Counted from the first letter of the stretch, positions 3,640 through 61,781 are shown. The stretch is 64,000 nt of DNA from Octopus sinensis (GCF_006345805.1 NC_042999.1:148986001-149050000); one strand, 5' to 3'. Program-made: numbers and translations. Notes: generated by a model not told the origin, from the sequence alone.

Positions 3640-4040
3640 GGTGTTTGATGTGTTACCAGTGCCGGTGGCATGTAAGAGAACCTTCCGTTTCACGACCGTT
3701 GCCAGCGCCGCCCCGACTGGCCTCGTGCCGGTGGCACGTAAAAAGCACCATCTGTTCGTGTCCATTGCCAGCCTCGCCTGGCCCTCGTGCCGGTGGCACA
3801 TAAAAAGCACCATCCGTTCGTGGCCGTTTGCCAGCTCTGTCTGGCACCTGTGCGGGTGGCACGTAAAAAGCACCCACTACACTCACGGTGTGGTTGGCGT
3901 TAGGAAGGGCATCCAGCCGTAGAAACACTGCCAGATTTGACTGGGCCTGATGAAGCCTTCTGGCTTCACAGACCCCAGTAGAACCGTCCAACCCATGCTA
4001 GCATGGAAAACGAATGCTAAACGATGATGATGATGATGAT
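3640..4040 (+). mobile_element. RTE-tail SINE-like repeat with internal ~54-bp units (representative). Other copies near 5870, 10985, 13630, 15737, 17700, 26860, 31600, 33225, 33765, 42700, 43010, 48690, 49250, 54035, 54770, 57950, 58420, 59045
   Basis: Recurrent gccggtggcacgtaaaaagcacc units, ending ...catgctagcatggaaa...(GAT)n. The same sequence forms the 3' end of the RTE fragments at 122-510 and 50745-52790. Confidence 0.85.
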
Positions 4041-12266: not shown

Positions 12267-14169
12267 GTTAATCAAATATATCCTTTGAGAATAAAGTGTA
12301 CTGGATTTCAGATAGTTGCTCTTGATAGGAGAAATGTCTAAAACCTTAAAAGTATTTAGAGATTCAATTAAAGCGATTATATATTAGAGAGTAAAAGTAG
12401 GAAAAATTACATCGTAAAAATATAAGAATATGAAATATAACAACACCTTTACCATACGATTTTAAATAGCATCTCTTTCATTCGATTTACTACACAGAAA
12501 TTCATCGTTTTCTCTGATGAGAGGATATACTTCCTAATAATTGCTATCAACTTTGGATTTCATTTCGAAAGGTAGTATGTTCATGAAACGATTGTAAGAT
12601 CTCTCAAATCTTTTTAAATGATCATAGCTATACTTCATATTTTTATTTATTTATACAATTTTGTTTATATTATGGACGTATCGCTGCTGTGATTTTCATG
12701 CTATAATTTTTCCTACTTTTACTCTCATATATATATATAAAACATGTTACTAATTTTTGTGGAAAAATTATATTAATACAAAAATATATTATCCACTGAA
12801 GATAACTGATTATCGTTGAAATGTTAATATTTTAGATTAGGGAACTGATAAGAATATGAAGTCTTCATCATGAAGTCTACTGAGATCTGGAAATTGGACA
12901 GCAAACAATTTATAAGCAAACGCAATGGAAACAAAGATGTCTAAAATCTGCAGCCAAGTCTTACAGGAATGTGGTTTGGATTTAGATTTTAACCAAGCAG
13001 AAAGAAAAAAACTAAGGAGTATCACATGTCCAATGATTGAGATGTATTCTTTTATATTTTACTTGTTTCAGTCATTAAACTGTGGTCATGCTGAGGCACC
13101 ACCCTGAAGAATTTATAGCTGAATGAATGGACCCCAATACTTATTTTTGTTTTTTTAAGCCTGGTATTTATTCCATCAGTCTCTTTTGCTGAACTGTTAA
13201 GTTACATGGACATAAACACACCAGCGCTGGTTATCAAGTAGTGGTGGGGGGACCAACACAGACACACACATATATATATTTATATATGATGTGACAACAT
13301 TCTTTCAGTTTCCTTCTACCAAATCCACTCACAAGGTTTTGGTCAGTCCAAGGCTGTAGTAGAAGACACTTGCCGAAGATGCCACGCAGTGGGACTGAAC
13401 CCAGGACCATGTAGTTGGAAAGCAAACTTCTTAACACACAGCTATGCCTGCGCCTATATTGTAGATTGTTAAATACCTACAGTATGTCAGAATCTTCAAC
13501 CCTTCAGCATTTAAACCAGCCACATCTAGCCCAAATACTATACCTGTTTTACGTTCAAATTGACCATATTCAGCCTCTCACACCTACCCTACAATGTCAC
13601 ATAAAAAACAAACAAGTACATCATCAAAATCATCATCATCATCATCATTTAACGTCCGTTCTCTATGCTAGCATGGGTTGGACGGTTTGACCAGGGATCT
13701 GGGAAACCAGAAGGCTGCACCAGGCTCCAGTCTGATCTTGCAGTGTTTCTACAGCTGGATGCCCTTCCTAACGCCAACCACTCCGAGAGTGTAGTAGGTG
13801 CTTTTTATGTGCCACCGGCAAAGGTACCAGGCATGGCTGGCAACGGCCACGATCGGATTGGTGCTTTTTACATGCCACCGGCACAGAAGCCAGTCAAGGC
13901 GGCGCTGGCATCAGCCACGTTCGGATGGTGCTTTTTATGTGCCACCGGCATAGAAGCCAGTCTAGGCGGCGCTGGCATCGGCCAAGGCGGCACTGGCATC
14001 GGCCAAGGCGGCGCTGGCATCGGCCAGGCGGCGCTAGCTGCAATGAAAAGAAGCTGCATGAGTAATTCAAAACAGTGTGGATAAATAAGCATTACGTTTG
14101 ATATGGTAATCTAAATTCTAAAGGATTAAGTTATCACTGAAGAAAGAACATCTCTGATTGAAATATTAC

Positions 14170-15448: not shown

Positions 15449-16747
15449 CTAAAGAAATTGGTTTAAAGAGAATGAAATAACAATGTTTTAATTTTTTCAA
15501 GTAATATGCATGGATTGATTGAAGAACATATTTTCAGGCATGTCTTTAAAATCACTAGGACTACTGCTTATGTCCCTCCTATATGTCCATATTTAACTTA
15601 AGAAAACAGAAAAATTATAGCCATCTCATAGAAGAAATCCCTCTCACTCTTGATCCAGCAGAACACTGAGTATGTGGCAGTTGGAGGATGAGAGGAATGT
15701 ACTAGCACTCAGCTGATATTCATTTCAACTATGGAATCATCATCGTTTAGCGTCCACTTTCCATGCTAGCATGGGTTGGACGGTTCAACTGGGGTCTGTG
15801 AAGCCAGAAGGCTGCATCAGGCCCAGTCTGATCTGGCAGTGTTTCTACGGCTGGATGCCCTTCCTAACGCCAACCACTCCGTGAGTGTAGTGGGTGCTTT
15901 TTACGTGCCAGACGGAGCTGGCAAACGGCCACGGACGGATGGTGCTTTTTACGTGCCATCCGTCCGTGGCCGTTTGCCAGCTCCGTCTGGCACCTGTGCG
16001 GGTGGTACGTAATGTGAAATGAAATAATCTTTATGGGCTCTCTCGAATAAATGGACTCAATGTCATAGACATTTAACTTGCATTTTTACACACAGTGTTT
16101 GTAAAGATATAATTAGCGACAGACTTAAGTGAAGCTGTGAGTCTGAGGCAGAAAGATAGGGAAGAGTGATTAGTGATGGACCTAGGAATGATGCACAAAA
16201 TGTGTGGCCAGTGGAAGAGAGAGCCAGAAGCTTTGAGTGGGTATAGTACACAGTTTGCTAGTTTCAGAAGAAACTAGCATTACGTTTGTAGTGAAGACAT
16301 AATGCATAATAGTTGAGTCTATACAGATTTCTGAAGGTACTGCAGGATATATACTTTACCATTTTGAACAGTGTTAGCACTGTAGAAATGACAAACATTC
16401 TGTTGGCTGAATGCATCAAGTTCACTTTCTTGAATTGTGGAAAGCTTTTGCAATGGACTGCCATCTTTATCTCTTATCTACTTAATATTATGGAATCTAT
16501 AGAGAAGAACCAACTTTATGGATGTCTGTGACCCAGGTTTAGCTTAACACGACATTCTACATGCCACAGTCAACTGAGTAAGGAATAGGTTCTAAATCTT
16601 CTGAGGATAATACTTGTAACATTGGCTGGGTATTACTTTAAATTTGGTGCTAAACATTAGGGTCTATAAGCCCTTGAGGGATTTTGCAGAAGTTTCTGTT
16701 AATATTTAACAAAAATAAACTAAAATGAAAGAAAGAAATAAACTCAC

Positions 16748-16801
16748 TGGGTGTGGTACATAGCAATCTTTGTAGTCCTTAGGGTTGATTCGAATTTCAC
16801 C
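16748..16801 (-). CDS. DIS3L2: DIS3L2 exon (CSD1)
   Basis: catcag|GGT...CCA|gtgagt, 54 nt, phase 0->0. GEIRINPKDYKDCYVPHP resembles GVLRINPKKFHEAFIPSP. Confidence 0.95.
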
Positions 16802-17546
16802 CTGATGGAGGAGAAATTGAAAAAAGTTAGTGAGAAAAAGGATTAATAGGAAGGGATAAATAAGACAAAGAATAGTTTTTCTATATGTTGATGTAATGAT
16901 TAACAAGATATATGTTTAAAATAAACCTTGAGTAATACAGGTAATACTTTCCCTGCTCACAGAGGTCAGGCAGAATTCATCAAGAAGGATTTTTTACAAG
17001 CCAAATGCCCTTTCCCACATAACCAAACATGTTTATATAGAAGACTGAAAACGAATGGCACTGCTTGTGTGATGGTGACACTAGTTTACAGCTATTATAC
17101 AATGTCAAGACAAAAAAGGCACAAACACGCACGCATGCACACACAGGCACACATACACACAATGGGCTTTTTTCAGTTTCCATCAACCAAATCCACCCAC
17201 AAGGCTTGGGGCTGTAATATATGATACTTGCCCAAGGTGTCCTGCAATGGGATTGAACCCAAGACCACATGGTTGGCAAGCAAATTTCTTAACTACAAAG
17301 CCATACCTGCACAGAAGTGTGGAATAAAATATATAAAGAATTCAGGACACAATAACAAACCCTTGTGACATTATGGTTAATCTTACATAAGGACCTTTGT
17401 GTAAGCAACAGCTTTCACAATGTGTAAAGGCTCAGCATTTTCTGAAACCCTTTCAACATCATTGCTGCTATAGGAAACACATAATATTAAAACACTGTGA
17501 GGGAAAATAGAATTATGATAAATAGATTTGAAAGAAAAGTTCTTAC

Positions 17547-17597: not shown

Positions 17598-18249
17598 CTG
17601 AAAAATAAAATAAATAAATAGATAAATAAATAAAATAAAATAATCAAACGTTTATAAAAAAGTACTTTGAATTTGATAAAGTTTCAATAGTTATGTGTTG
17701 GACAGGCGGTACTGGCATCGATGATGCTTGAATGGTGCTTTTTATGTGCCAGCGACATGGGAGCCAGTCAGGCAGTACTGACATCGACCAGGCTTGAATG
17801 GTGCTTTTTACTTGCCACAAGCATAAGAGGCAGTCAGGCGGCACTGGCAACAACCATGCTTGAATGGTGCTTTTTACGTGCCACCAGCATGGGAGCCAGT
17901 GAGGTGACACTGGCAACGACCCACGTTTGAATGGTGCTTTTTACGTGCCACCGGCGGCAAAGGAGCCAGTCAGGCGGTACTGGCAATGAGCACACGAAAC
18001 ATGCATATATAATATATATATATGCTTCTTTCAGTTTCTGTCTACCAAATCCACTCACAAGAAAAATATGAAAGTATATTTGGCCAGCCAAAAAAAAAAC
18101 CGGAAAAGACAGGTTGAACACAGAGATATCTTCTACCAGTTAACCACTTCTCACAATGACTTAATACATACTGTGTTACAATTACAAAATATACAGAATT
18201 AAACAATTCTGTTTTATTGTATCAAGAGAATGAAATCTCATTGAATCAA

Positions 18250-18948: not shown

Positions 18949-19043
18949 ATAAGAGGTGTTGTTTGTCTGGTTATTCGGAGGAGGTGGTGGTTGAGCCTGA
19001 TTTGACATTTTGTACATTGGTGTGAAGTTGTGAGGTGCATGAC
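18949..19043 (-). CDS. DIS3L2: DIS3L2 N-terminal Pro/Asn-rich exon
   Basis: ttctcacag|GT...TAT|gtatgt, 95 nt, phase 1->0. (G)HAPHNFTPMYKMSNQAQPPPPPNNQTNNTSY joins in frame to KIEDIE; no conserved homology recognised. Confidence 0.7.
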
Positions 19044-22634: not shown

Positions 22635-24880
22635 ATAAACCTCATTGTTGAGTAAAAATGTCTAATACAAATGTATCAAATAACAGTGTTAATGAGGCTG
22701 GAACCAAAGGTGAAAGCCTTTCAACTGGCAGGTGCCCTGTGGTCGAGCAGCACAGGCCCAGTCGTCATCTAGAAACTGCTTGTAAACAAAGCCAGAGGCA
22801 GAGAAGAAGGTGAGATAAGGAGGCAAACCGAACAGCAATTGAATGCTGGATCAGGAGTGAACCCAGTAGAACAGGATTCCGACAACAAATGAAAGTAAAA
22901 TGGAATAAAATAGGACTCTTCGAAATAAGTGGGAAGGTGAAGATAGTGCCCATTATTGTTGGATCCTTGGGAACAGTATCAGAAGGCATTAAGGGGAATA
23001 TAAAAGAAATTGGAATAGAGTGCCCAGTAGAACTGTTACAAAAGGTTTGCCTCCTTGGCATAGCCAGAATAATCAGGTAAGTATCAGATAGCTGAAAACA
23101 ACGGATAGCATAGTACTGCAGGACGCAGGTAGCAAGCCCACTATGAATGTAAAACTCCAGGAGCTCCAATAAAACCCGTAATAAAGAGAAATGATAATTA
23201 ACACTCATTGTGAGTTCTTTATAACTGAAACTAACAAGATTATTTGGGCTGCAGCTATGGTTGCTGCAGATAGAGTTGGATACAAAAGAAGAGAACAAAC
23301 AGAATGTAAAGAACCATTCTGGCGTAGACGAATTTGTGAGAAACAAACAAAGTTGAAAAAGATATTTAGGACAAGTTGATAGATTGAATAGAGGGGAATT
23401 GCATAACGAAAGCATAAGAATAATGCTGGAGAGAACATATAGAATAAGAAATAAAAGGTATGATGTGATACTGGAATAATTGAAATAAAGCAAAATTGGA
23501 AAGGTATAACTATAGAGCAAAATAATTCAGGCAAATCAGAAGAAACTGTTTCAGGAACTAAATGGGCAATTATTACACATAACAATGATACCAAATGCAG
23601 AGGAAAGCAGGGAATTTTGGAGAGGGGAACTGGGGACCAACTTGTAGAGCATAATGATGAAACAGAGTGGCTGCATGAAATCCAAGATAGGTTAAGAAAT
23701 ATAGAAGGCCAAGAAGACAAAGATAACTAGAGAAATGATAAAAAAGCAGTTAAAAATATTCCCAAATTGGAAGAGCCCAGGATCAGATAGAGTCCAAGGT
23801 TATTGGATGAAGAAGCTGAGAGGACTCCATGAAAGGATAGCACAACAGCTAGATGAGTGCTTGCAGAAAGGCACAGTACCCAGCTGGATGACAAAGGGAA
23901 AGACATTGTTGTGTGCCAAGGGTCCTGAAAAGGAGAATTTTGCATCCAACTTTAGGCCAATAACATGCTTTCTGCTAATATGGAAACTAATGTCAGGTGC
24001 TTTGGCTGGTGAACAGTATAGATACATGGAAAACAGTGGGCAGCTACCTATTAGAGATCCAAAAGAGGAGCCAGGGAACGAAGGATCAGCTCTTAATTGA
24101 TAATCTAATTATCAGGAACTGCAAGAGAAGACACATAAACCTGAGCATGGCATGGGTTGACTATTGTAAAGCATATGGTATGATACCACACTCCTGTATA
24201 ATAAGAACAAATGGAAATGTATGGAGTAGCAGAAAATATGAGAAGCCTTATATGGAATAGCATGAAATGCTGGAGAATGGAATTGACAGCAGAGAATCAA
24301 GTATTAGGAGAAATGAAAATCAAGAAAGGTATCTTCCAGGGAGACAGTGTGTTCTCACTGATCTTCATGCTGGGAATGATCCCCTTGAGTGAAATCCTAC
24401 AGAAAACAAAGTTGAGGCATGATCTGGGAAGAGGTAAGGGAAACTGAACCCCTTGCTATTCATGGATGACCTAAAATTATTCACAAAAGCTGAGGTAGAA
24501 CCAGACAACCTAGTCCAGTCTGTGTGGATTTTCTACAATGATATTAAGATGGAGTTTTGACTCTCAAAATGTGCTATGATGGCGATGAAACAAGGTAAGC
24601 TTTTCAGAACAGAAGGCATATGGTTGCCAAGTGGTAAAATGATGAAGGCAATTCAACCTCAATCCAGCTATAAATACTTGGGAATACTTGAAGCAGATGG
24701 AATCAAACACAACGGCATGAAGGAAAAGACAAAAAGAGAGTACCTATGGCGAGTGAGAAAAATATTGGCTTCAAAGCTAAATGTCAGGAACATAATTTTG
24801 GCAATAAAATTGTGCAGTTACAGTAGTTCAGTATGGCACTGGAATCCTCAAGTGGACAGAGGACGAACTAAAGGAGTGCT
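22635..24880 (+). mobile_element. R4/Dong-clade non-LTR retrotransposon remnants, segments out of order
   Basis: [56 protein letters not shown] and YKYLGILE motifs; C-terminal VPIIVGSLG..LQKVCLLGIARIIR. Preceded by (TAA)n. Confidence 0.9.
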
Positions 24881-25120
24881 TGGTGTACCCTTGTCAGATG
24901 GGTAGTATATTGGGCTTCATATATTTGCACCTCAGTCACTTTGATGGCATGTGCTGCTCTGTCATTCAATAACACATAACATTTTGAAAATGGTGAATAC
25001 CATCAGTTTTTTTACATAAAGTAAATTCTTATTCAATTTCATTAAAGCAGGGTTTATCTCATGGAACCCCAGATTTATTTTATGGAATTCTGGGACTACT
25101 TGGCATCCACTTTTGGAACA

Positions 25121-25561
25121 TTAACCCTTTAGCATTCAGATTGGAATAATAATAGAAGGGTCAGTACAAGGACAACGCTTGTTGAGAAGCAAGTGATATT
25201 TCACTCAGTCCTTATATTGATTTTACTTGCCTGGTTGTTACAGTTCTTATTGAGATGAGGATCCATCGGGTTGGAACCACCCCTGTGCGCCATTGACGAC
25301 AATAGTAACACCATCTCATCAGCAGGAAGGTAAAATAATGGCTTGTCAACTTCTTCAAGAAGCTGTGAATACGAACCTTTTATTCATATTGTTTCGAATT
25401 AATCCTACATTATCTGTGGCTTTGAGATTTCAATGATGTGATTGCTTATTTTCAGAATAACATTGTAAGGTAAGTGAGAGAAGCCAGATCTAGCCAGTTT
25501 GAGAATAAAACAAATAGAATATTCTGGCCAGATATGGCCGGTTTAAACGCTAAAGGGTTAA
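25121..25561. mobile_element. piggyBac-type MITE (TTAA target site) carrying a captured exon copy
   Basis: TTAA|CCCTTTAGC...GCTAAAGGG|TTAA. The body matches the uninterrupted family copy at 60897-61124 except for a ~240-bp insert. Confidence 0.85.
25231..25362 (-). CDS. Candidate duplicated exon inside a MITE
   Basis: Paralogue of 25647-25801 with an open frame: LLEEVDKPLFYLPADEMVLLLSSMAHRGGSNPMDPHLNKNCNNQ. Possible acceptor tattcacag|; donor is either GC (cag|gcaagt) or a GT 4 nt further on. Confidence 0.4.
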
Positions 25562-25646
25562 TAATTACTGGAATAATAATAGAAGAGGACAACACTTGTT
25601 GAGAAGCAAGCAATATTTCACTCGGTTTTATATTGATTTTACTTAC

Positions 25647-25801
25647 CTGGTTGTTACAGTTCTTATTGAGATGAGGATCCATCGGGTTGGAACCACCCCG
25701 GTGCGCCATTGACGACAATAGAAATACTATCTCGTCAGCAGGTTGGTAAAATAATGGCTTCTCAACTTCTTCAAGAAGCTGTGAATATGAACCTTTTACT
25801 T
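25647..25801 (-). CDS. DIS3L2: Candidate N-terminal DIS3L2 exon (original copy of the duplicated exon)
   Basis: gtttgttccacag|AA...CAG|gtaagt, 155 nt, open, phase 1->0. (E)VKGSYSQLLEEVEKPLFYQPADEIVFLLSSMAHRGGSNPMDPHLNKNCNNQ. Assignment to DIS3L2 is by position and strand only. Confidence 0.55.
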
Positions 25802-27474
25802 CTGTGGAACAAACAAATACTAGATAGAAAATTGCTCATGAAGAATGTAGATGATGTTGGATGACATTCACATGGAAACAAAAATAATTTAAATGCTAAT
25901 AAAATCACTAGAATTTGAAAAGACAAAACAAATGTCAGACTGTGTCTGCAAGAAACAGTACATTTAGCAGCAGCAGCAGCAATAAAGATGATATATAATG
26001 ATTGAGGTATGTTAGCAGACTGTGAGGAGAAGAAATATCAAACAGAAAATGAGTTTTATCACACCACACCAGCTTAAAAAAAGGGAAAGGCATAAAATAA
26101 TGTAATTCTAGATGCATCTATAAAGACAGGGTGATAATAACTGCATCATGAGTCAACTTAATCAGGGTTGGCCTAGGGTTAAACAAAAACATTCAAATGT
26201 TTAAAATAAATGAATATGAATTCAGTTATTTTCTATTATAAATGATACTATTTTCCTGCACCAACCAATGTACAATATTGTACATTTCCTTAATAATTCT
26301 TTCATCCCTACTGCAACAATTATTGCAAGGTCTATGGTTCATTAATGAAGTCAGAATAAGACTCAATATGTCTGGAGTTATTTCCTCTTATTTGTCAGCA
26401 AGAATTATATTAGTCATTGAATAATATGCTGTTTTATTCTCTCATTTCTTTTAAATGCTCTATACATCAAACAGCTACATACACACACACGCATACATTG
26501 ATAGATACATAGAAAAATATATTCATCACAAGGTCTGGCCTTTGTACAGTGGTAGCTTATGTGTGTGAATGACCCTAAGAGCAATGCCAGTAGGGCCTTC
26601 CATGACGGTCAGGTCCAAGGATAGAGGCTAGACAAATAGGCAGCATGTCTCCCCAGAAGTAAAAGTCAAGTTTGCACAGGGCCAACAACCCTACCTTGAA
26701 AATATCAAAGTTACAGAAGCATTGATTATAATCCAAAACCAACTCAAGAGAGGATAACCTAGAGCCAAGAACAGTGGAGAAAAGTCATTAATGGTCTATG
26801 TTCCATAGGGAACAAGGGCTTAAGTAATATATATGTGTGTGTATATATATATCATTATCATCATCATCGTTTAACATCCGCTTTCCATGCTAGCATGGGT
26901 TGGACGATTTTGACTGAGGGCTGGTGAACCAGATGGCTGCACTAGGCCGCAATCTTGATCTGGCAGAGTTTCTACAGCTGGATGCCCTTCCTAACGCCAA
27001 CCACTCTGAGAGTGTAGTGGGTGCTTTTTACGTGCCACCAGCACGGGGGCCAGTCAGGTGGTACTGGCAATGACCTCGCTCGAATCTTTTTACGCATGCC
27101 ACTGGCACAGGTGCCAGTACGCGACGTTGGTAATATATATACACACACACACACATACACGTAACATATGGTATAATTATAAATAGGGCAAATTTTAGCC
27201 ATTTCTCCGCAGACTGGAAAAATGATGAACAACGTTAATCAATTTTCAAACCTTATTGGGTTCTCATCATAAGCATCCACATTATTTTGACAATCTCCAG
27301 AGAAACAAGCAGCCAAACTGTTTATATACTCAACAAATGCAGCAGTTACTCTATGAAGGAGTCCCTAATTTGCATACCAAAAGTGTTTAACACACTATCA
27401 ATACCAGCAGCCTGTCAACGGGGATCTTAGTCCACACAGTATCAAGGTATGATATAATATATACGTAATATACA

Positions 27475-32871: not shown

Positions 32872-35800
32872 TATAGATTAATATTGTGCTCTGTAGAGAC
32901 AAATGTTTGTTTTTACTGACAACCATAATATCCTTTCTACTTAAGGCACAAGGCCTGAAATTTTGGGGGACGGAGGTTAGTTGATTATACTCACCCTAGT
33001 GCTTAACTGGTACTTATTTCATTGACCCCGAAAGGATGAAAGACAAAGTCGACCGTGGCAGAATTTGAACTCCAAACAAAGATAAATGAAATGCTGCTAA
33101 ACATTTTGTCCGATGCGCTAACAATTCTGCCAGCTTGCTGCCTTATCTACAAGCACAATATCAAAATACATATTCTGTGACTAAGTCTATTTAAGGCTCT
33201 ATAAAAGTGCAACTCATCATTTATCATCATCATCATTTGATGTCCGTTATACATGCCGGCATGGGTTGGATGGTTTGACCGGGCTGGCACACTAGAAGGC
33301 TGCACCAGACTCCAGTCTGATTTGGCATGGTTTTCTATGACTGGAAGCCCTTCCGAATGCCAACCAATCTGAGAGTGTTTTATTATCCATTCATTTGTTA
33401 GGCAGTGAGCTGGTAGAAGTGTTAGCATGCCAGACAAAATGCTTGGCAACATTTCTTTTGGCTTTACATTCTGAGTTCAAATTCCTCCGAGGTTGACTCT
33501 GCCTTTCATCCTTTCAGGGTTGTGAGCACTGGGGGTTGATGTAACTGACTAACCCTGCCAAAAAAGTGCTGGCATTGTGCCAAAATTAGAAAACATTATT
33601 CATTCATTTGTTATATGTCTGTTTTTCCGTGATGGCATGGGTTAGATGAATGTGTTATTTAAGGCATTCTTTCACAGTTGAATGTTTTCCTGACACTAAG
33701 TCTTATCTCCATTTTAAATAAGAGACTTTTCAAGTAAGAAAGTTATAAACATTAAAACTGGCTCCTGTGCCGGTGGCATATAAAAAGCACCATCGAAATG
33801 TGGCCAGTGCCAATGCACTCTGACTGGTTCCCGTGTTGATGGCACGTAAAAAGCACTATCCGAACGTGATCAATGCCAGGCCCGCCTAACTGGCTCCTGT
33901 GCTGGTGGCATGTAAAAAGCACCCACAACACTCTTGGAGTGGTTGGCATTAGGAAGGGCATCCAACTATAGAAACATTGCCAGATCAAATTGGAGCCTGG
34001 TGCAGCTGCTGGCTTTCCAGGCCTCAGTCAAACCATGCCAGAATGGAAAATGGACGTTGAACGATGATGATGGTGGTAGTGATGGAAATAAATAAGTGCT
34101 AGGTTAACCCTTTCGATACTATATTTCTGTTGAAATAAACTGCTTTTATTTTAATTAATTTTGAAAATAATGAAGAATTTACTAAGCGGTCGAAAAAAAA
34201 AAAGAAAGAACATCAGAGATGCTTTACCCCACACAGAAACTACAGAAGCTACTCAGAGGTTTTGCAAGCTCTTCTAAATCTATTGCAATGCTGGAAAGCC
34301 TTCTGTATCGTCAGCTGGTACCTCAGGGTCACAAGCATTTCATCCCTTAGCTTGTAAGCTTCACCTGAGTCGGGCAGCGAGGAGTGAGCTGGTCTTCACC
34401 TACAGAACAATTTCACTCGCAGTCTCTTACCATCATTAAGCTGGTGCTTGGAACATTTACTAACATGAAGTTTTGATAGAAGGTTTTAATTTAAATCACT
34501 TTAAACAATAAGTTTCCATTATAGAAGCAAGAGTCTTCTCAGGTCAGTAGGTGCCAAGGGGGTTGAATGGGTTGAGATATTTAGTTACTCCCACTTTACA
34601 ACTTAAGTTCAAATTCCACTGTGGATAGCTTTGTATTTAATTTGGTGGTGGTGGTGGAGGGGAATTTATCTGATTGTATTTTATTCTGAGGCCAACTTTA
34701 CCTTCTGTCATTTCCAGGTCAAGGGTCAATGTAATCACCCTTGCCAGTACAAGAAAGGGTTATTATAATTCTTATTTCTTTACTGCCCACAAGGGGCTAA
34801 ACACAGAGAGGACAAAGAAGGACAGACAAATGGATTAAGTCGATTATACCGACCCCAGTGCGTAACTGGTACTTATTTAATTGACCACAAAAGGATGAAA
34901 GGCAAAGTTGACCTTGGCGGAATTTGAACTCAGAACGTAGCAGCAGACGAAATACTGTTAAGCATTTCCCTCCAGCATGCTAACGTTTCTGCCAGCTTGC
35001 CGCCTTATATTATAATTCTGTTGAGGTCAACCTTGCCGTTTATCCTTTCCAGGTCAGTAAAATAAGTAACAGTTGAACACTGGGGTTGGTGTAATCAACT
35101 ATCCCCTTCCCGCTAAATTTACTGGTTTTGTGCCAAAAATTATTATTTTTGCACCCTAACCACTAGGCCACGTGCCTTAGTCCAGGTGGTACATTGTGTT
35201 CTTGAGCAAAACACTTCATCTCACATTACTCTGCAATCACTTCCACACCTGACGCGTGGTACACTGTGCACCTGATTAGGCAACATTGATTTGATGGAGA
35301 GAGGGAGTTAATGAGCAGCATGAATATTTGATCGTTATAAACAAATCATTTGTGCAGGTTGTTTCACAAAAGCTGAGCACTCACATGTCATCTGTGATGG
35401 GAAAGTCCATTGTAATTATTACATATTAATTACTTACTTATATCCTGTTACCAATCTAAGAAATACAGGATTTATACTGCATCAGGTGATTCTTTAATAG
35501 GTCTCCAGTGATATTAAATGATTAAAAATAACAATTAAAAATTTAGTAAAAGTTGTATCTATTGGATATAGTGAACAATAATTGTGCAGCAATAATATAA
35601 TACAGAAAGATAGTAGGACAGTTTAGTAAGTAATACAATACAATTAAATTTCTGTATTATATATCACACTAGCTGGTCCTGTGCCATAAAAAAATGATGG
35701 CTAATTGTAGTGTTTTATATACAAATATGGTGCAAAATAATCACAGATATAAACATTCACATACTTGTACATGCACACAAATACACAGGTATACTCACAC

Positions 35801-37574: not shown

Positions 37575-37720
37575 TATCTCCTGATAAGTTCATCTTCAAA
37601 TGATTTATCGGAGAAAAGAGGTCATGGATTCTTTTAGTTACTTTTGGAAATGGTTGCTAGAACAGGTAGCTCACCTTGTTTGATTGCATCTTGTGCAGGA
37701 TTTCTTTGATATTTCGGGAT
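37575..37720 (-). pseudogene. Decayed partial duplicate of the 5' part of the Lys-rich exon
   Basis: Aligns to about 38970-39105. Reads QRNPAQDAIKQGELPVLATISKSN* with CAA->TAA where the original has Q. Confidence 0.8.
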
Positions 37721-38399
37721 GATTTTAAAGGGATGACTTTACTTGTATGTTAGAAAATGACCCTTAGAAATTCACTCAACAGTCTAACCTAAATAACACA
37801 AATTAGTTTTGGATTGAAAAAGACTTTTAAATAAATTCTTAACCATTTTATTGTTTATCTTGCATCCTTTACTCACTTCAGTCATTGGACTGCAGCCATT
37901 GCTGCTATCACCATTTTGATGGAGATATTTTATACTGAATACACCTGTATTTTCCCTTAATAATAATAATAATAATAATAAAACGTCATTCAACACAAAA
38001 TATCCCTACAAGAATATGGCTCTTTGAAAATAACTTAACGGTCAATGAAACCATTCCAAACAAAGTAAAAAAAAAAATTCAACAGAAGCTTTATTTTTTT
38101 TTTTGCTATCTTAAGAAAATCCAACTGTCATTGCATACAAACAGTAAAACTAAATATATCTCTAAGCAATCTTTGAACTTGTTACATCTATCTGTGTCCT
38201 GTTCTGTTGAGTGTTCTATATTCAAATACCTAGGTTTTTGTGAGAAAGTGAAAGTATGTAAATGAAAATGGATAAACACAAAATGTCAAACAGAATGAGA
38301 AAGAATTTGTTATGAAAAGAACCAATAAATGGATGAATAATACTATAATATCAGCAGAAAATGGTCTTTCAGTGAGAAAGAACTGAAAGACACACATAC

Positions 38400-39123
38400 C
38401 TTTAGTCTTAGCCACAATACATTTATCGGATGGTTTTTGCCCATTGTCCAGTTCACTGGACTTTTTCTTTTTCTGTTTTTTCCCTGTACACTGAGTAGAA
38501 GAAAGTTGTTTATGGTCTAAATTTGAGAACTGTTTTACAGATTGTTCTTCAACTATATACATTTTATCGTCACTGATTTCCAAATCTGTTGCTACACTTT
38601 CACCAATTCCTGAGCATTTTATTATTGCTGTGTCATATAATTCTGTTTCTATACTCAACGGTTTTTTCCTGGATTTTTTAACCCGTCGTCTCCTACGTTT
38701 TTGTTTCAAAGAAGTCTGACTACCTTCCTCGGAATTTTCACATTCACAGCTTTCATTATCAGAGTCACTGCTACCTTTCAGTTCACAAAAGTCATCTTTC
38801 TCTCTAGAAATACTCTTCAATTCGTTTCTTTCTTCAAAGTCTTTTGTAATTGTTTTCTCTGCATCAGAGTTTTTCTGAGTATTTATACTTTTATGAGATC
38901 TAGACTTTTTGTTTTTTCTTTTAGTTTTAATTGCTGATAAATTTTCTCTGACTAATTGAATTTCTGAAACTCTCCTGATAAGTTCTTCTTCAAATGATTT
39001 ATCGGAGAAAAGAGGTTGAGGATTCTTTTGGTTACTTTTGGAAATGGTTGCTAGAACAGGCAGCTCACCTTGTTCGACTGCATCTTGAGCAGGATTTCTT
39101 TCAATTTTACAAGACTCCATCAT
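38400..39123 (-). CDS. DIS3L2: Candidate first coding exon of DIS3L2: 241-aa Lys/Glu/Ser-rich extension
   Basis: Longest non-transposon ORF in the window. Starts ATGATG and ends AAAG|gtatgt (phase 1), compatible with acceptors at 25801 and 19043. Linkage to DIS3L2 is inferred. Confidence 0.65.
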
Positions 39124-41795
39124 AAAAATAATAAAATCTATTTACACTTTATTTCTTTAAAAATGTTATATTTGTCCATTATATTTAGTTAAAAATAAAA
39201 GAAAGAATTTCAAATTCATATGAATTGAAATATATAAATATGGTTAAATTTTCAATATAACTGTTTTTCTAATAATTTTATGAGATTGAGTTAATAGAAA
39301 TTTGAATGAACATTTTAAACTGAATTTAAAAGTTAGGTTAATGTTGAAATAAAAACAAATGTTAGAGATCTTTCATTATAATTTCTGATGTATTTTTTAA
39401 AAAGGATATGTTGATATAAGGCAGATTTTGATTCTTGACACCAAAGGGATGTATATGGCATATAAATTGAGTGCCTTGAGTTGATACGAAAAACAAATCT
39501 GGTAGCCACAGTAGAGTAGACGCAATGCTGACAATGGCGATGATAGAAAATATAACCCAGTCTTATTGTACGGTGACCAAGGATGGCATATATTTGTCTT
39601 TTTTCCTAGATACTTTTCTTCTCAATAATTCCCCAAAAACCTTTCCACTAACAGAGACGATGCCTAGGAATAAAGAAAATATTACAAAATAGTTTCCCAG
39701 GAATAAGAGTATTTACAAAAGTAGCGAGGACAAAAATAGTTTACTTGGAATTTTTGCGAAAGCAGGGAAAAGAGAGAAACTTTAGTAGTTATGAAAGTTT
39801 ATGGACCAGTTAGGACAAATTGTGGAAACTCAGGGAAGGCAAGCAAAAAGACTTGTAGTGAGCAAGTGAGCAATTATAGAAGCATTAAACAAGGCTTGTA
39901 AACAGTTGGTCAGTATTAGATTAAAAAATGAAATTAAACAAAAAAAAAAAAAGAAAAAAGAAAAAGAAAGAAAACTGTCAGTTTATTTGAAATTAAAACA
40001 TGAAATGACTTTTGAGAGCTGATGATAACAGATCATTGTGGTCATGCTGTTACATCGATTGCAATCTGATGAACAGCTTTTCCACAGGTTTTAAACTGCC
40101 ATTGTTATCATCAGTAAGTATTTACATATTAGATACAAAGTTCATATTAGGGGCTCTATATTTAGACATTTTTTGTTTTCATCCATTTTACAATGCTAGT
40201 GCAGATGGGTTCGTTTTTTTTTTTTTTTTCGTTTAATGTCCGCTTTCCATGCTAGCATAAAATATTTAGATATTTTCATATCACCAAAGTAATTGTTTCA
40301 ATGCAGGCACAGTCGATTGGTTATCATATAATTGTTGATGAATAACCAGTTAAGACAATAAATTAATAATGGTATTCATCAGTTAAATTGCCAGTCAGAA
40401 ATATATCACAATCAAATGTTGTAAAGGTAGCAAAATGAAAGGAGGAGGGAATCAGATCAGAAAAAACATGCAAAATTAGGGAAAAATGTGGAAATTCAGG
40501 CTAATAGCATTGAGGTTTTAGGATAGAGAAAATATTGATGAAATATAAGAAAATTACTCCAATGCTGCTTGTAACCCCTATTTGCAATCAAAATGGATAC
40601 CAATATACAGGAAGACGGTAGGATTAAAATATAGAGCAGCATAGCAATCAGATATTTACTTCAGAATTATGGTGCAGCTGTAATATAAGATAGGTTTTGG
40701 ATTATTCAGTCAAACGTAATGCTTGTTTATTCATTGTTTTAGGTTAATTATGCATTACCTCATAGCTTTGAGATTTCAATAAGTGATTGTTCATTTTTAG
40801 AATGACAGTGTAGGGAAGGAGTGAGAAGCTAATTCTGCTGGTTTTAACAGAAAACAGGCAGAATATGGTTGGTTTAAATGCTAATGAGTTAAAGCTTTAG
40901 AGTTAACTTTCATTTTAATTAATGATTTCCTTGAAAAAGTGGGATACGAACATACACAAAAACATAGAGAGAGAGAGAGAGAGAGAGAGAAAAGCAGGGA
41001 GAGGGAGAGCATGGGGGATGGAGGGAGAGGGAGGAAAGAAGAAAGTAATCTTTAACACTAAAATGTAACAAATGGCAGGAATCATTACAAAATCTGTTCA
41101 AGATGTACAAAAAAAAAAAGGGCTGGCTTCCATCAATCAGGATTGATCTTATATATGCACCTGTATGAGGGATTGTCTCTGAGATGAGTGTGTTTAGAAC
41201 CTCTACACAGAGTTTTGTCTATTGCACAATTAATTCCAACATATCAATATTTTTCAACTCAGTTTGACGTATATGAGTCTTTGCCATGTTTGTATTTAGT
41301 ATACAGACAACTGTCCCGAGGGATTTTTATTTTTGTTACCTCAGCCCTATTATTATAATTAGCTACTCTAATTCTGGTGTGACCAGTGGCTAACACTCTA
41401 AAGGTCATAGGTTAAAAGTCCAAGCTAAACAAAGTATGCTAACGAAAACAGCATATTATATTTAGCTTGAAAATGAAGACATAATTTCTGTATATCTTTA
41501 CACAGGAAATGCTTACAGCATATAAAATTCAAAAGAGAAATTACCTCTATTTTATTCTACATTTCTTGACCTTCAGAAATATTTTGTCTGCATAAAGTGA
41601 TTAAACAATTAATATATTTCTGTATATAGTCCAAGGAAGGTGGTTTTTTAAAAAACTTTTATTGTTTCACACAGAATTTTTTTATGGGTTCAGTCCCACT
41701 GTGTGGCACCTTGAGCAAGTGTGTTATACTATAGCCTCGAGCCGACCAAAGCCTTGTGAGTGGATTTGGTAGGCAGAAACTCAAAGAAGCCTGTC

Positions 41796-41833
<38 letters not shown>

Positions 41834-43754
41834 TTGTGTATATGTTTGTGTGTCTGTGTTTGTCCCCCCAACATCGCTTGACAACCGATGCTGGTATGTG
41901 TTTATGTCCCTGTAACTTAGCAGTTCAACAAAAGAGACTAATAGAATAAGTACATGGCTTATAAAGAATAAGTCCTGGGGTTGATTTGCTCGACTAAAGG
42001 CGGTGCTCCAGCATGGCCACAGTCAAATGACTGATACAAGTAAAAGAGTAAGGAGTAAAGAGAGTAGTACAAGTGAGGGAGTTTTTTTCTAATGATTTAG
42101 GACAATTTGAATATTGTTAGAGCAGTTCAGGTGTTACAAAAGAGATATTTAGAGAGAGTAACTGGAAGAGAGAGACAGGTCACAATTGATTTGGAGTTAC
42201 TTTTATTAGATCTATATTATTACATTTCATGGATAATATTATGAAAACAAAGGACAGGGGAAAACTTCTCAATTACACTTGTCTAAACTATGTCAAAAGA
42301 GTAAGGCAGAAATTAAATTCATTATAAATGATGATGATGATGATGATGTTGGTGGTGATGTTTAACATGGTGATGATGATGATGAAATTGAATTTAGAAA
42401 TGTTAAATCTTTTTTCTTTGATGCTAAAATAGAAACTGAAATGATATATGATTGATGCTAAATAGCAAACACATATACAAATAGCAAAAAAAAAAAAAAA
42501 CAAAAACAATAACAAAACTTTGCTAGCTGGTCACTGCAACCTGCTGTGAAATGTGTCCGATGAAATTACCTTAGTATAAAATATCAAAACTGACATATTT
42601 GTCATATCAATGTGATATTGTGAAAATGGCATTCAATGTCAACTTTCATCAAACACTAATTAAAAATAAATTAAATAAACATTTATATAAGTAATAATCA
42701 TCATCATCGTTTAATGCCTGTTTTCTATACTGGCATAGGCTGGATGGTTTGACTGGGGACTGGCAAGCCAGAAGGCTGCACCAGGCTCCAGTCTGATCTG
42801 GCAAGGTTTCTACGGCTGGATGCTCTTCCTAATGCCAACCACTGAAAGTGTAGTGGGTGCATTTTATGTACCACCGGCACAGGAGCCACTCAGGCAGCAC
42901 TGGCATTGGCCATATTCGTCCAATATATTTAACAACATTCTACATTTAGTAACCAAATAAAACAGCTGAGCCAAATTATAATCATAATAAACGAGGATTT
43001 ATATTTTCATAAAAAGCACCATTCAAGCATGGCCGATGCCAGTGCTGTGTAATTAGCACCTGTGCCAGTGGCACATAAAAAGCACCATACAAGCATAGCC
43101 GATACCAGAGCTGCCTGATTGGCAGACATGCCGGTGGCACGTAAAAAGCAGCAGTTGAGCGTGACTGATGCCAGTGCCACCTGACTAGCTCCTGTGCCAA
43201 TGGCATTTAAAAGGCACCCACTACACTCTCAGAATGGTTGCCATCAGGAAGGGCATCCTGCTGTAGAAACCTTGCCATATCAGATTGGAGTGCAGCCCCC
43301 AGGATTACCAGTTCTCAGTCAAACCGTCCAACCCATGCCAGCATGGAAAGCAGACATTAAATGATGATGATGGTGACTTATAGCTATTTTGTAAACTAAA
43401 ATATAAAAAAAAATATTAGCCACACAATCACAGTAAATATACAATGAAAATGTTTTAATTTTCTTAAATTAAACAAGGATGAAAATTGATAAATGTAAAT
43501 GGGTCTTTGTTGGGTTTTAACAATGAGGATTCACTTATTTGGATCAGTGAATGGCTGAGCATTGCATAGACATATGTACTTTGACTCTTTAGCATTCCCT
43601 TTATTCTGTCAAAAGTAATGCTTATGATTCAAATTGTTTTGAATTAATCCTTTTGTTACCATATTTCTGTTGAAATGCTCTGTGTTTCTTTTAATTAAAT
43701 ACAAGAAAGAATTTAGTAAAATAACTTAGTTATCATTAAGCTAGTGTTAGCAAC

Positions 43755-44134
43755 GGAGGCGCAATGGCCCAGTGGTTAGGGCAGCGGACTCGCAGTCATA
43801 GGATCGCGGTTTCGATTCCCAGACCGGGCGTTGTGAATGTTTATTGAGCGAAAACACCTAAAAGCTCCACGAGGCTCCGGCAGGGGATGGTGGTGATCCC
43901 TGCTGTACTCTTTCACCACAACTTTCTCTCACTCTTACTTCCTGTTTCTCTTGTACCTGTATTTCAAGGGGCCGGCCTTGTCACTCTCTATGTCACGCTG
44001 AATATCCCTGAGAACTACGTTAAGGGTGCACGTGTCTGTGGAGTGCTCAGCCACTTACACGTTAATTTCACGAGCAGGCTGTTCCGTTGATTCGGATCAG
44101 CCGGAACCGACAGAGTGCTTCCATCCCCATCCAT
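43755..44134 (+). mobile_element. Young full-length tRNA-derived SINE
   Basis: A box TGGCCCAGTGG, B box GGTTTCGATTCC, (CCAT)n tail, and 13-bp TSD TAGTGTTAGCAAC at 43742-43754 and 44135-44147. Confidence 0.9.
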
Positions 44135-60717: not shown

Positions 60718-61781
60718 CAGGATGTGGTGAATAAATTGTCATCTATATTTTGCAAAAATGAAAATGACACTGACATCTCGTTTTAACAGATATATTTACC
60801 AAAATTACATAAAAATAACTTGAATTGCCATTGGCTTCAACCATGGCCTCCAGATGACTTCGGAATCTCTTGAACTCTTCTAGAGAGTCTCCTTGTTTAA
60901 CCCTTTTGTGTTAAAACTGGTTGTATCTGGCCAAAATATTCTCCCTGTTTTATGTTAAAACTGGTCAGATATGGTCTTTCATAGCTACCTTACAGTGTTT
61001 TTTCAAAAATAAACAATCACATCATTGAAATCTCAAAGCCATGAAATAATGCATGATTCATTTAAAATGGTGTGCATACATAAGCTTTACATTTGACAGA
61101 ATAATCTGAATGCTAATGGGTTAAGTTGGTGAATGCTGCCATAATCCTTGCTTTCTGTTCATCTTTGGTGTTACAAGGAGTTTTGTTGGTCTCTTGCTCA
61201 ACTGTGCCCCACACATTATAATCAAGAGGGTTACAGTCTGGGGAGTTAGGTGGCCAGATGTTAGGGGTGATGTGGTCACAGAAATTGTCTGACAGTCATG
61301 ACTGGGTTCTGTTTGTGTGGCATGGTGCAGAGTCCTGTTGCCAGACATAGGGTCTTCTAGTAGCCACCTTCTTGACCTGGGGCAGCACTGCCTCCTCCAT
61401 GCACTTGATGTAGGCTTCCATGTTGAGTGTGAGGCCATGTGGGAAGATGAATGGAGGCATAACATCGCCATCACAAGTGATCACTCCAAATACCATGATG
61501 TTGACTGGATGTTTGATTTTTATCATTCTCACTACATGTCTTCAGATTGACACCCAGACATTCTGAAATGTTCCTATTGGAGCTCCTAGTGTGAATGCCA
61601 AGCAGTACAGTATATTGTTTCCAAATTTCTGTCAGAGTGAATTGCATCATGGTGCTGTTTTTCTCACAGACAGTGCCCAATTGACCCTACTATACTGTGC
61701 AGTCAACAAAATCAAGAACAAACAATGCACATGTGTGAAATTAACAATATAAAATGTCGACAATTTACCCATTGCACCTTG
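60718..61781 (-). mobile_element. Tc1/mariner maT-type transposon interrupted by a TTAA MITE (60897-61124)
   Basis: TA-flanked TIRs. HPVNIMVFGVITCDGDVMPPFIF, YVWQQDSAPCH and WPPNSPDCNPLDY motifs. Confidence 0.88.

What the first reader, a model, noticed from the sequence alone, without database searches (positions are those of the whole stretch)
25121..25801. Host exon duplicated into the interior of a piggyBac-type MITE, with both copies apparently still coding
Seen: a TTAA-flanked MITE (25121-25561) has about 20 nt of its body replaced by ~240 bp (about 25143-25380) copied from the adjacent flank (about 25570-25797), which contains a well-defined exon. Across the 48 aligned codons there are no indels or stops and 9 substitutions. 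Seven fall at third codon positions (about 0.008 by a simple 1/3 binomial), four are synonymous, and the amino-acid changes are E/D, Q/L, I/M and F/L; the intronic part has indels. The donor changed from GT to GC (cag|gcaagt), while a GT 4 nt further on gives phase 1. The chain 38400 (phase 1) -> 25801-25647 -> 25362-25227 -> 19043 would be fully in frame. Inference: MITE-associated templated capture (Pack-type or gap repair) created a new tandem or mutually exclusive exon in the DIS3L2 N-terminus.
Basis: partly seen in the sequence, partly recalled or inferred. Interest (0 to 1): 0.8.

Follow-up and report, generated by a model that had tools for sequence, protein, structure and literature searches.

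The report
Exon fragment copied into intronic MITE
A small TTAA-flanked transposon relic in an intron of a DIS3L2-like gene has had about 25 bases of its interior replaced by a 241-base copy of the neighbouring exon and intron. This is a known kind of DNA-repair accident, and there is only a weak, unproven hint that the copied exon is itself used.

Summary
A TTAA-bounded, piggyBac-style MITE (25121-25561) carries a 241-bp insert (25142-25382). The insert is a copy of the sequence that begins 8 bp beyond the MITE's right end (25569-25798) and replaces about 24-27 nt of the MITE body. The source covers nt 4-155 of a 155-nt coding exon (25801-25647, minus strand) plus 78 nt of its intron. The gene is a DIS3L2 homologue.

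The architecture matches the single-copy "Pack-TIR" class described in animals: gap filling or template switching, a nearby source, a small internal gap and short junction microhomology.

The claim that both copies still code is not established. The copy lacks the parental acceptor and has an in-frame TGA just upstream, and its donor is GT>GC. The third-position excess (7 of 9) is nominally unusual (P 0.02-0.04 if only the parent is constrained). Once total divergence is included, the likelihood ratio for constraint on both copies is only 2-3, or roughly 10-15 with indels and stops.

No transcript or orthologue data could be reached.

Verdict: a new member of a known kind. The copy is probably a pseudo-exon, with about a 0.2 chance of being a real cassette exon.

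The parts
25121..25142 (+). Left TTAA target-site copy plus the MITE 5' end (TTAACCCTTTAGCATTCAGATT). The last T (25142) is shared with the captured sequence, giving 1-nt junction microhomology.
25142..25382 (-). Captured copy 'A' (241 bp). 25382-25231 is exon nt 4-155. 25230-25142 is the first 78 nt of the downstream intron plus 11 extra nt from indels.
25231..25362 (-). Hypothetical 132-nt (44-codon) phase 0-0 cassette inside copy A. It uses the cryptic acceptor gttcgtattcacag|CTT and the GC donor CAG|gcaagt.
   Evidence: splicing not tested
25383..25561 (+). Remaining MITE body, 3' TIR and right TTAA (25558-25561).
25562..25568 (.). 7-nt spacer (TAATTAC) between the MITE and the start of the parental segment.
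25569..25798 (-). Parental segment 'B' that served as template (230 bp).
25647..25801 (-). Parental coding exon (155 nt). Acceptor tgtttgttccacag|AAG, consensus donor CAG|gtaagt, open in the frame set by exon 1 (phase 1 in, phase 0 out).
   Evidence: exon status inferred from signals and frame, no transcript
38400..39123 (-). First coding exon (MMESCK...AKTK, ends in phase 1). Against a related species it is 91.4% identical with no gaps, while both flanks have many gaps. dN/dS is 0.51.
18949..19043 (-). Candidate next exon (95 nt), open in two frames: frame 0 VMHLTT... and frame 2 HAPHNF...
17395..17494 (-). Candidate small exon (alternative start 17467). It restores the frame between exon B's consensus donor and CSD1. 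The Pfam CSD1 alignment extends 7 positions into it.
   Evidence: weak
16748..16801 (-). First recognisable DIS3L2 CSD1 exon (GEIRINPKDYKDCYVPHP).
60897..61124 (-). 228-bp uninterrupted member of the same MITE family, used as the reference for the empty element.

Best explanation
An old, non-autonomous TTAA-specific (piggyBac-type) MITE sits in the intron 86 nt downstream of an N-terminal coding exon of a DIS3L2 homologue. At some point a break inside or at this MITE was repaired by DNA synthesis that switched templates.

Reading the + strand, synthesis copied the first 22 nt of the MITE. It then jumped to the flank 8 nt beyond the MITE's other end and copied 230 nt, that is 78 nt of intron plus 152 of the 155 exon bases. 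It then returned to the MITE about 25 nt further in.

The result is a single-copy 'Pack-TIR': an exon fragment duplicated 416-427 bp downstream of its parent, in the same orientation and inside the same intron.

The copy most likely behaves as an intronic pseudo-exon that is skipped, or at most included at a low level. It lost the parental acceptor, has a stop just upstream, and its donor has become GC. Its intact reading frame and third-position-biased differences are explained mostly by its youth, by constraint on the parent, and by chance or gene conversion.

Shown: the structure, breakpoints, family membership of the MITE, gene identity and frame arithmetic. Inferred: the repair mechanism, the order of events and the lack of function.
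For: - TIRs, TTAA ends and family copies.
- The insert is a copy of the adjacent flank and occurs nowhere else in the window.
- It replaces 24-27 nt of a roughly 228-250-nt element.
- Junction microhomology is 1 nt (left) and 1-4 nt (right, TTTA by family consensus).
- MITE copies differ by 22-30% from each other, whereas A and B differ by about 6-8% at substitution level. The capture therefore looks younger than the family.
- All of this matches the published signature of single-copy animal Pack-TIRs (cis bias, mostly <5 kb; microhomology median 2 bp; small internal gap; TE older than the capture): PMC8277862.
- Against function of the copy: no native acceptor, upstream TGA, GT>GC donor and weak cryptic acceptors.
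- Exon-part divergence (9/150) is about what 'copy neutral, parent constrained' predicts from the intron-part divergence (8.0 expected at d=0.08).
- The likelihood ratio for constraint on both copies is only 2-3.
- A second exon-fragment copy in the same gene (37577-37707) is clearly dead, which shows that such local copies arise here and decay.
Against: - Seven of nine coding differences are at third positions. P is 0.02-0.04 even if only the parent is constrained.
- This bias is not typical of the gene's own N-terminal exon, which shows 23/17/22 by codon position and dN/dS 0.51.
- Both indels fall in the intron-derived part (P 0.26 under a neutral copy).
- The copy has no stop in 50 codons (P about 0.7-0.8), whereas the comparable exon-1 fragment copy has two.
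- CAG|GCAAGT is the best possible context for a GC donor.
- In-frame ways of including the copy exist.
- The repair mechanism and the timing relative to MITE insertion are inferred, not observed.
Confidence: 0.66

Rival explanations
1. The copy is a real new cassette exon. After capture it is spliced in behind the parental exon through the cryptic acceptor at 25363|25362 and the GC donor (132 nt) or the +4 GT donor (136 nt). This adds a tandem 44-45-residue repeat to the disordered N-terminal extension of DIS3L2. Both copies are held by purifying selection.
For: - The frame is intact over 50 codons.
- 7 of 9 differences are at third positions and dN/dS is 0.25.
- Simulations give P(>=7/9 third) of about 0.2, and 0.33 from the Poisson expectation, if both copies are constrained, against 0.015-0.04 if only the parent is.
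- Both indels lie outside the coding part.
- The last 75 coding nt carry a single synonymous difference (P 0.02 for such clustering).
- The dead exon-1 fragment copy offers a contrast.
- In-frame chains with A132, A136 or A150 all reach CSD1 without stops.
- Animal Pack-TIRs of exonic origin are often transcribed as chimeras with host genes (PMC8277862).
Against: - The native acceptor is not included and there is an in-frame TGA upstream.
- The cryptic acceptors are poor (8/16 and 5/16 pyrimidines, against 11-13/16 for the gene's real exons).
- The donor has mutated GT>GC.
- Total exon divergence (9) is about twice what strong constraint on both copies predicts from the intron divergence (4.4 at d=0.08).
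- The combined likelihood ratio is only about 10-15 before the damaged splice sites are counted, and the pattern was selected post hoc.
- With two acceptors, two donors and two open downstream frames, some in-frame combination is expected by chance.
- There is no transcript evidence.
Confidence: 0.22
2. The element is, or was, a mobile Pack-MITE. The exon fragment was acquired in a transposition-dependent way, either by abortive gap repair right after excision or by replication-fork switching. MITE plus cargo may exist elsewhere in the genome.
For: - This copy has the best-preserved ends of the family in the window: both TIRs match the 16-nt pattern with 0 mismatches and both TTAA sites are intact.
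- piggyBac elements are reported as recently active in Octopus vulgaris (PMC13282606).
- Multicopy Pack-TIRs exist in animals (PMC8277862).
Against: - There is no second cargo copy in 64 kb.
- The source lies 8 bp from the element's own end, which indicates an in-situ event.
- Only 24-27 nt of the MITE are missing. Excision-triggered abortive repair is expected to give larger, terminally biased deletions (PMC8277862).
- No peptide homologues of the cargo were found among 5.8 billion predicted proteins. That database appears to lack this species.
Confidence: 0.08
3. The two copies arose by an ordinary tandem or segmental duplication, or by unequal exchange unrelated to the MITE. The MITE ends are juxtaposed by separate events, such as two insertions plus deletions.
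For: Direct repeats 416-427 bp apart resemble a tandem duplication. Another small local duplication exists in the same gene.
Against: - The unit is not repeated. MITE sequence follows copy A but not copy B, and a 22-nt MITE end precedes A but not B.
- The two MITE parts are collinear with one complete family member apart from a gap of about 25 nt, and they are bounded by a single TTAA pair.
- This scenario needs three or more independent events instead of one.
Confidence: 0.04

Closest known systems
Single-copy Pack-TIRs of animals, formed by transposition-independent gap filling (Tan et al. 2021, Nat Commun, PMC8277862)
   Same: - Host sequence lies between the two ends of a short, old TIR element.
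- The source is nearby on the same chromosome (most cases <5 kb; here 8 bp from the element).
- Junction microhomology is 1-4 nt (published median 2 bp).
- Only a small internal part of the TE is lost.
- The TE family looks older than the capture.
- It is single-copy as far as can be seen.
- The source is exonic and the capture lies inside a host gene.
   Different: - The superfamily here is TTAA/piggyBac-type. Most published cases are hAT and Tc/Mariner, and piggyBac is not mentioned in that paper's main text.
- The host is apparently a mollusc, which that text does not cover.
- The missing part is about 11% of the element, against a median of 4.6%.
- The copy sits in the same intron, in the same orientation and directly downstream of its parent exon. 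It could therefore in principle act as a tandem exon rather than as a UTR or retained-intron chimera.
Pack-MULE / Pack-CACTA (Pack-TYPE) transposons of plants (PMC6379663, PMC8903248)
   Same: Non-autonomous TIR elements whose interior is replaced by fragments of host genes, including exons with flanking intron.
   Different: Plant Pack-TYPE elements are often multicopy and mobile, and they capture in trans from other chromosomes. Here there is no evidence of mobility after capture, and the source is the immediate flank.
Filler DNA and internal deletions from abortive or template-switching gap repair of DNA transposons (P element, Ac/Ds; microhomology-mediated MITE birth, PMC3814204)
   Same: An internal segment of the element is replaced at short microhomologies by sequence copied from a nearby template.
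   Different: Most described fillers are short or come from the element itself. Here the filler is 241 bp of host gene.
Tandem exon duplication and mutually exclusive exons
   Same: Two similar exon-derived segments lie in the same orientation within one gene, and both have open frames.
   Different: Canonical cases duplicate the whole exon with both splice sites and keep length and phase. Here the acceptor and the first 3 nt are missing, the donor is GC, and the duplication is embedded in a transposon.

Membership tests
piggyBac-superfamily MITE | TTAA target-site duplication at both ends | tested here: met
   TTAA at 25121-25124 and 25558-25561. Also present at both ends of the 60897-61124 copy and at the right end of the 40700-40892 copy.
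piggyBac-superfamily MITE | Short terminal inverted repeats beginning 5'-CCC and ending GGG-3' | tested here: met
   CCCTTTAGC(A/G)TT at both ends; 17-nt arms, 94% complementary. That CCC...GGG is typical of piggyBac is from general knowledge.
piggyBac-superfamily MITE | Short, non-coding, multicopy family | tested here: met
   Five alignable copies in 64 kb. The uninterrupted one is 228 bp. The TIR pattern occurs 9 times against 0.06 expected.
piggyBac-superfamily MITE | Autonomous partner with matching ends that encodes a piggyBac transposase | not tested
   None seen in the window. No eukaryotic genome collection is available.
Pack-TIR (animal) / Pack-TYPE element | Non-TE host sequence between the two TIRs, with an identifiable parental copy | tested here: met
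   25142-25382 matches 25569-25798 at 89% including gaps. The remaining MITE parts are collinear with family members.
Pack-TIR (animal) / Pack-TYPE element | Microhomology at capture breakpoints | tested here: inconclusive
   1 nt on the left. On the right, 1-4 nt depending on which family variant was ancestral. This is compatible with the published median of 2 bp but too short to be significant alone.
Pack-TIR (animal) / Pack-TYPE element | Orthologous TE without filler in outgroups (post-insertion capture) | not testable with these tools
   Only an exon-1 contig of a related species could be retrieved. Exon-B peptide searches found nothing.
Pack-TIR (animal) / Pack-TYPE element | Mobilisation of element plus cargo (multicopy, distinct TSDs) | tested here: inconclusive
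   No further cargo copy in the window.
Tandem / mutually exclusive exon pair | Each copy flanked by its own functional acceptor and donor, with the same length and phase | tested here: not met
   The copy starts at exon nt 4 with no AG at the homologous place and has an upstream in-frame TGA. The donor is GC. Possible exon lengths are 132, 136 or 150 nt, against 155.
Tandem / mutually exclusive exon pair | Purifying selection on both copies | tested here: inconclusive
   dN/dS 0.25, Fisher P 0.06. Third-position excess P 0.02-0.04 under a neutral copy. Likelihood ratio 2-3. No outgroup is available to polarise the changes.
Tandem / mutually exclusive exon pair | Both copies present in mature transcripts | not testable with these tools
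   No transcript data. Protein databases hold no spliced product of this gene.
DIS3L2 (RNase II/R-family 3'-5' exoribonuclease) | CSD1/OB and RNB domains in order on one strand | tested here: met
   Best named hits are 'DIS3-like exonuclease 2', with PF17216, PF17849 and PF00773. tblastn places exons at 16819-16748, 15448-15341, 9129-8992, 5537-5439, 2858-2664 and 848-726 on the minus strand. Pfam CSD1 scores 22-23 bits.
DIS3L2 (RNase II/R-family 3'-5' exoribonuclease) | Physical linkage of exon 1 and exon B to the DIS3L2 body in one mRNA | tested here: inconclusive
   Several stop-free in-frame chains exist. They rest on splice-signal and frame arithmetic only. The N-terminal extension has no homologues or Pfam domains.

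The most novel reading that the evidence does not exclude
Template-switch repair inside an intronic piggyBac-type MITE created, in one step, a new in-frame cassette exon directly downstream of its parent. Under this reading the exon is now spliced through a cryptic acceptor and a GC (or +4 GT) donor. It is kept by purifying selection and gives the DIS3L2 N-terminal extension a tandem 44-45-residue repeat. That would be a caught-in-the-act example of tandem exon duplication produced by transposon gap filling in a cephalopod.
Probability: 0.2. Interest if true: 0.6.

Novelty: new member of a known kind. Interest (0 to 1): 0.33.

Why it matters
This is a clean, fully resolved example of a DNA-transposon relic capturing a coding exon fragment from its own flank. 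Both breakpoints, the source and the empty-element reference lie within one 64-kb window. It extends the animal Pack-TIR phenomenon to a TTAA-type MITE, apparently in a mollusc genome rich in such elements.

If the copy turned out to be spliced, it would show a concrete molecular route from transposon-associated repair to tandem exon duplication. If not, it is a useful annotated pseudo-exon that gene predictors may wrongly include in DIS3L2 models. It carries an open frame, a near-consensus donor and multiple in-frame splice options.

Tried and rejected
1. Protein-database search with exon 1 plus exon B, looking for annotated or transcript-derived products. It returned one genomic exon-1 ORF from a related species and nothing covering exon B.
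2. Search with conserved DIS3L2 exons, to retrieve a cephalopod annotation showing the N-terminal splicing. It returned only distant homologues (64% identity or less), so there was no usable gene model.
3. Search with the stop-to-stop ORF through exon B and its intron, to obtain an outgroup. No candidates were found.
4. Exact-pattern DNA scan of metagenome contigs for the conserved exon block. It found 0 hits.
5. Paper search for the Logan run accession to name the related species. It found 0 papers.
6. Deciding between the two open frames of exon 19043-18949, and testing the candidate exon 17494/17467-17395, by homology. Pfam CSD1 gains only about 1 bit with the candidate exon. Local alignments to DIS3L2 N-termini are no better than shuffles for either option. 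This remains unresolved.
7. Rfam scan of 24000-27000. Nothing was found.
8. Pfam on the neighbouring broken ORFs, on exon 1 and on the exon B peptide. Nothing was found.
9. Inverted-repeat search around the second exon-fragment copy. The output was swamped by a (TA)n tract and no TIR pair was seen.
10. The tandem-duplication model and the model with the copy as original and the flank as derivative were both rejected on structure. The flank copy is contiguous with the only good acceptor and with exon 1's phase.
11. An assembly artefact was rejected because the copies differ by 15 substitutions and 2 indels.

Full report
**1. What is in the sequence**

On the + strand, 25121-25561 is bounded by TTAA (25121-25124 and 25558-25561). 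It has terminal inverted repeats TTAACCCTTTAGCATT / TTAACCCTTTAGCGTT. This 16-nt pattern, allowing up to 2 mismatches, occurs 9 times in the window against 0.06 expected.

BLAST and alignment define five family members:
- 25121-25561
- an uninterrupted 228-bp copy at 60897-61124
- 43581-44634 and 13496-14129, both with nested insertions
- a left-truncated copy at 40700-40892

The copies are 70-78% identical to each other. The element is therefore a genuine, old, multicopy TTAA/CCC...GGG MITE.

Inside it, 25142-25382 (241 bp) is a direct copy of 25569-25798 (230 bp). Identity is 89% including a 1-nt and a 10-nt indel. The window holds no other copy.

The other family members read TTAACCCTTTAGCATTCAGATT-ATTCTGTCAAA(A/C)GTAATGCTTAT(T)T(A)-TTCA(c/t)A(t)TGTTTTGAATTAATC. 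The 25121 copy reads ...CAGATT-[241 bp]-TTCATATTGTTTCGAATTAATC. The insert therefore replaces about 24-27 nt of the MITE.

The T at 25142 is shared by MITE and flank, giving 1 nt of microhomology. At the other junction the flank (CCTTTTA|C) and the family consensus (TTATTTA|TTCA) share 1-4 nt, depending on the ancestral variant. The source begins only 8 nt beyond the MITE's right TTAA.

**2. The gene and the exon**

All relevant coding features are on the minus strand.

*Gene identity.* Conserved peptides from 16801 down to 726 hit DIS3-like exonuclease 2 proteins carrying PF17216, PF17849 and PF00773. tblastn places CSD1, OB and RNB exons at 16819-16748, 15448-15341, 9129-8992, 5537-5439, 2858-2664 and 848-726. 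Pfam CSD1 is found at 22-23 bits. 'DIS3L2' is therefore supported.

*Exon 1.* Upstream, a 241-codon ORF starting MMESCK (39123-38400) ends in phase 1 at AAG|gtatgt. A related species (Logan SRR11869390/91, loci L001 and L002) keeps this ORF. Identity is 91.4% with no gaps in 724 nt, against 71 and 37 gap columns in the flanks. dN/dS is 0.51, with differences spread 23/17/22 over the codon positions. It is a real but weakly constrained coding exon.

*Exon B.* This exon (25801-25647, 155 nt) has a good acceptor (tgtttgttccacag|AAG) and a perfect donor (CAG|gtaagt). It is open in exactly the frame handed over by exon 1. Its exon status rests on these signals only. It has no homologues or domains.

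**3. What the copy contains and lacks**

Copy A holds exon nt 4-155 and the first 78 nt of the downstream intron.
- It does not include the parental acceptor. The MITE sequence upstream reads ...aatatgaaTAAAAGG, which gives an in-frame TGA two codons before the homology.
- Its donor is CAG|gcaagt, a GT>GC change.
In both copies it lacks -1G and +5G.
- Two acceptors are usable. One is the cryptic internal site gttcgtattcacag|CTT at 25363|25362, with 8 of 16 pyrimidines at -20..-5. The other is aatatgaataaaag|GT at 25377|25376, with 5 of 16. Acceptors of the gene's other exons score 11-13 of 16.

**4. Frame arithmetic**

It is stop-free and reaches the conserved GEIRINPK...DGHSDIYICG.

Other chains are also stop-free:
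- (a) e1, B, 19043-18949 read in frame 0, a candidate exon 17494 (or 17467)-17395, then 16801 onward.
- (b) e1, B extended to the +4 donor, 19043-18949 read in frame 2, then 16801 onward.
- (c) Chain (a) plus a 132-nt A cassette, chain (b) plus a 150-nt A cassette, and e1 joined directly to the 150-nt A in place of B.

B with its consensus donor joined directly to 19043-18949 and then 16801 is out of frame. The true constitutive structure must therefore be (a), (b) or something not yet recognised. Homology does not decide between them.

Two conclusions follow. First, before the duplication the gene had to be in frame without A, so A cannot be required. Second, with two acceptors, two donors and two open downstream frames, finding an in-frame way to include A carries little evidential weight.

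**5. Is the copy under coding constraint?**

*Counts.*
- Over 150 gapless coding nt there are 9 substitutions, at codon positions 3, 3, 2, 3, 3, 3, 3, 3 and 1.
- Sd is 4.5 and Nd is 4.5. NG86 dN/dS is 0.25. Fisher P is 0.06.
- The intron-derived part has 6 substitutions in 78 nt plus two indels.

*Probability of at least 7 of 9 third-position changes.*

| Model | P |
|---|---|
| Both copies neutral | 0.004-0.008 |
| Copy neutral, parent constrained | 0.015-0.04 |
| Both constrained at omega 0.5 | 0.06 |
| Both constrained at omega 0.2 | 0.2 (simulation) to 0.33 (Poisson) |

*Total divergence.* At the intron-derived divergence (d about 0.08), 'both at omega 0.2' predicts about 4.4 differences. 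'Copy neutral' predicts about 8.0. Nine are observed. A profile likelihood that uses third-position, non-third-position and intron counts together gives a likelihood ratio of only 2-3 for 'both constrained' over 'copy neutral'.

*Further factors.*
- Both indels lie outside the coding part, a factor of about 3.8.
- The copy has no stop, a factor of about 1.3.
- The lost acceptor and the mutated donor count against function.

*Internal control.* A 131-bp copy of the 5' end of exon 1 lies at 37707-37577, 93% identical to 39101-38971. It also has 9 differences, but these fall 4/1/4 across the codon positions and include two in-frame stops.

*Other considerations.* The last 75 coding nt of A and B differ at one synonymous site (P 0.02 for such clustering). 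That pattern fits either selection or a gene-conversion tract between repeats 416 bp apart.

*Overall.* This is a real but weak hint that was selected post hoc and has no outgroup. I put the probability that A is, or was, a functional exon at about 0.2.

**6. Mechanism**

The simplest history has three steps.
1. The MITE inserted at a TTAA 86 nt downstream of exon B's donor.
2. Later, a break in or at the MITE was repaired by synthesis that switched to the nearby flank at a 1-nt microhomology.
3. Synthesis copied 230 nt and switched back at a 1-4-nt microhomology, about 25 nt further into the MITE.

A tandem-duplication origin does not fit. MITE sequence follows A but not B, and a MITE end precedes A but not B.

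MITE copies differ by 22-30% from each other, whereas A and B differ by about 7% at substitution level. The related species differs by about 13% at neutral sites. This suggests the capture post-dates both the family's spread and that species split. The prediction is an orthologous MITE without cargo in the sister species.

**7. Comparison with what is known**

Tan et al. 2021 (PMC8277862) describe 370 Pack-TIRs in 100 animal genomes, nearly all single-copy. They attribute these to transposition-independent gap filling on the following grounds:
- cis bias: 57% lie within 15 kb of the source, most within 5 kb;
- microhomology at breakpoints, with a median of 2 bp;
- small internal gaps, with a median of 4.6% of the TE;
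- orthologous TEs without filler in outgroups.

They also report enrichment of exonic sources and frequent chimeric transcription with host genes.

The present case fits every feature that could be tested. It differs in superfamily (TTAA/piggyBac-type rather than hAT or Tc/Mariner). It also differs in the unusually intimate geometry: the source is 8 bp from the element, in the same intron and the same orientation. That geometry is what makes a tandem-exon outcome conceivable.

Plant Pack-MULE and Pack-CACTA elements (PMC6379663) are functionally analogous but typically mobile and trans-capturing. piggyBac elements are reported among recently active DNA transposons in Octopus vulgaris (PMC13282606). 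The window's taxon was not verified here.

**8. Verdict**

- The structural and mechanistic interpretation is supported.
- 'Both copies still coding / new exon' is unproven and, on balance, unlikely.
- This is a new member of a known kind and of modest interest. Interest would rise if junction reads or orthologue data showed that the copy is used.

Noticed in passing
window 37577-37707 (minus strand), compared with 38971-39101: A second small local duplication in the same gene. 131 bp from the 5' coding part of exon 1 is copied about 1.4 kb downstream into intron 1, at 93% identity. The copy has two in-frame stops and a random codon-position pattern. It abuts a tRNA-like SINE and a (TA)n tract. 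No flanking TIR pair was found.
   Followed up: partly
window 43581-44634: A MITE of the same family carrying nested insertions. These include a tRNA-derived SINE-like segment (about 43750-43830) and a second TTAA-flanked MITE type with ends CCCTTTTGTTACC (from about 44277).
   Followed up: no
window 13496-14129; also about 3600-4000, 15780-16010 and 17650-17930: The 13496-14129 MITE copy holds a GC-rich repeat. Its translated ORFs (…AFYVPPA…GKRPRTDG…-like) recur at several other places in the window, which suggests an abundant dispersed repeat family.
   Followed up: no
window 25452-25838 (minus strand): The reading frame of exon B stays open through its donor, across the intron and well into the MITE: 125 codons stop to stop. 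An ORF-based gene caller could mistake this for a longer exon.
   Followed up: partly
window 23735-24905 (+ strand): A run of overlapping broken ORFs immediately left of the MITE looks like a degraded retroelement ORF by eye, but it gave no Pfam hit at E<=0.01.
   Followed up: partly
window 17395-17494 and 18949-19043 (minus strand): The DIS3L2 N-terminal gene model is ambiguous. Exon 19043-18949 is open in two frames. Exon B's consensus donor is in frame with CSD1 only if a small candidate exon (17494 or 17467 to 17395, weak donor AAG|gtcctt) is included. Otherwise a weak +4 donor must be used.
   Followed up: partly
L001/L002 (Logan SRR11869390/91) compared with window 38094-40166: A related species shares the exon-1 region at 86% overall identity (91% in the exon). 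Its first 30 nt also match two other window sites (34774-34803 and 60194-60223), presumably the edge of a shared repeat.
   Followed up: no
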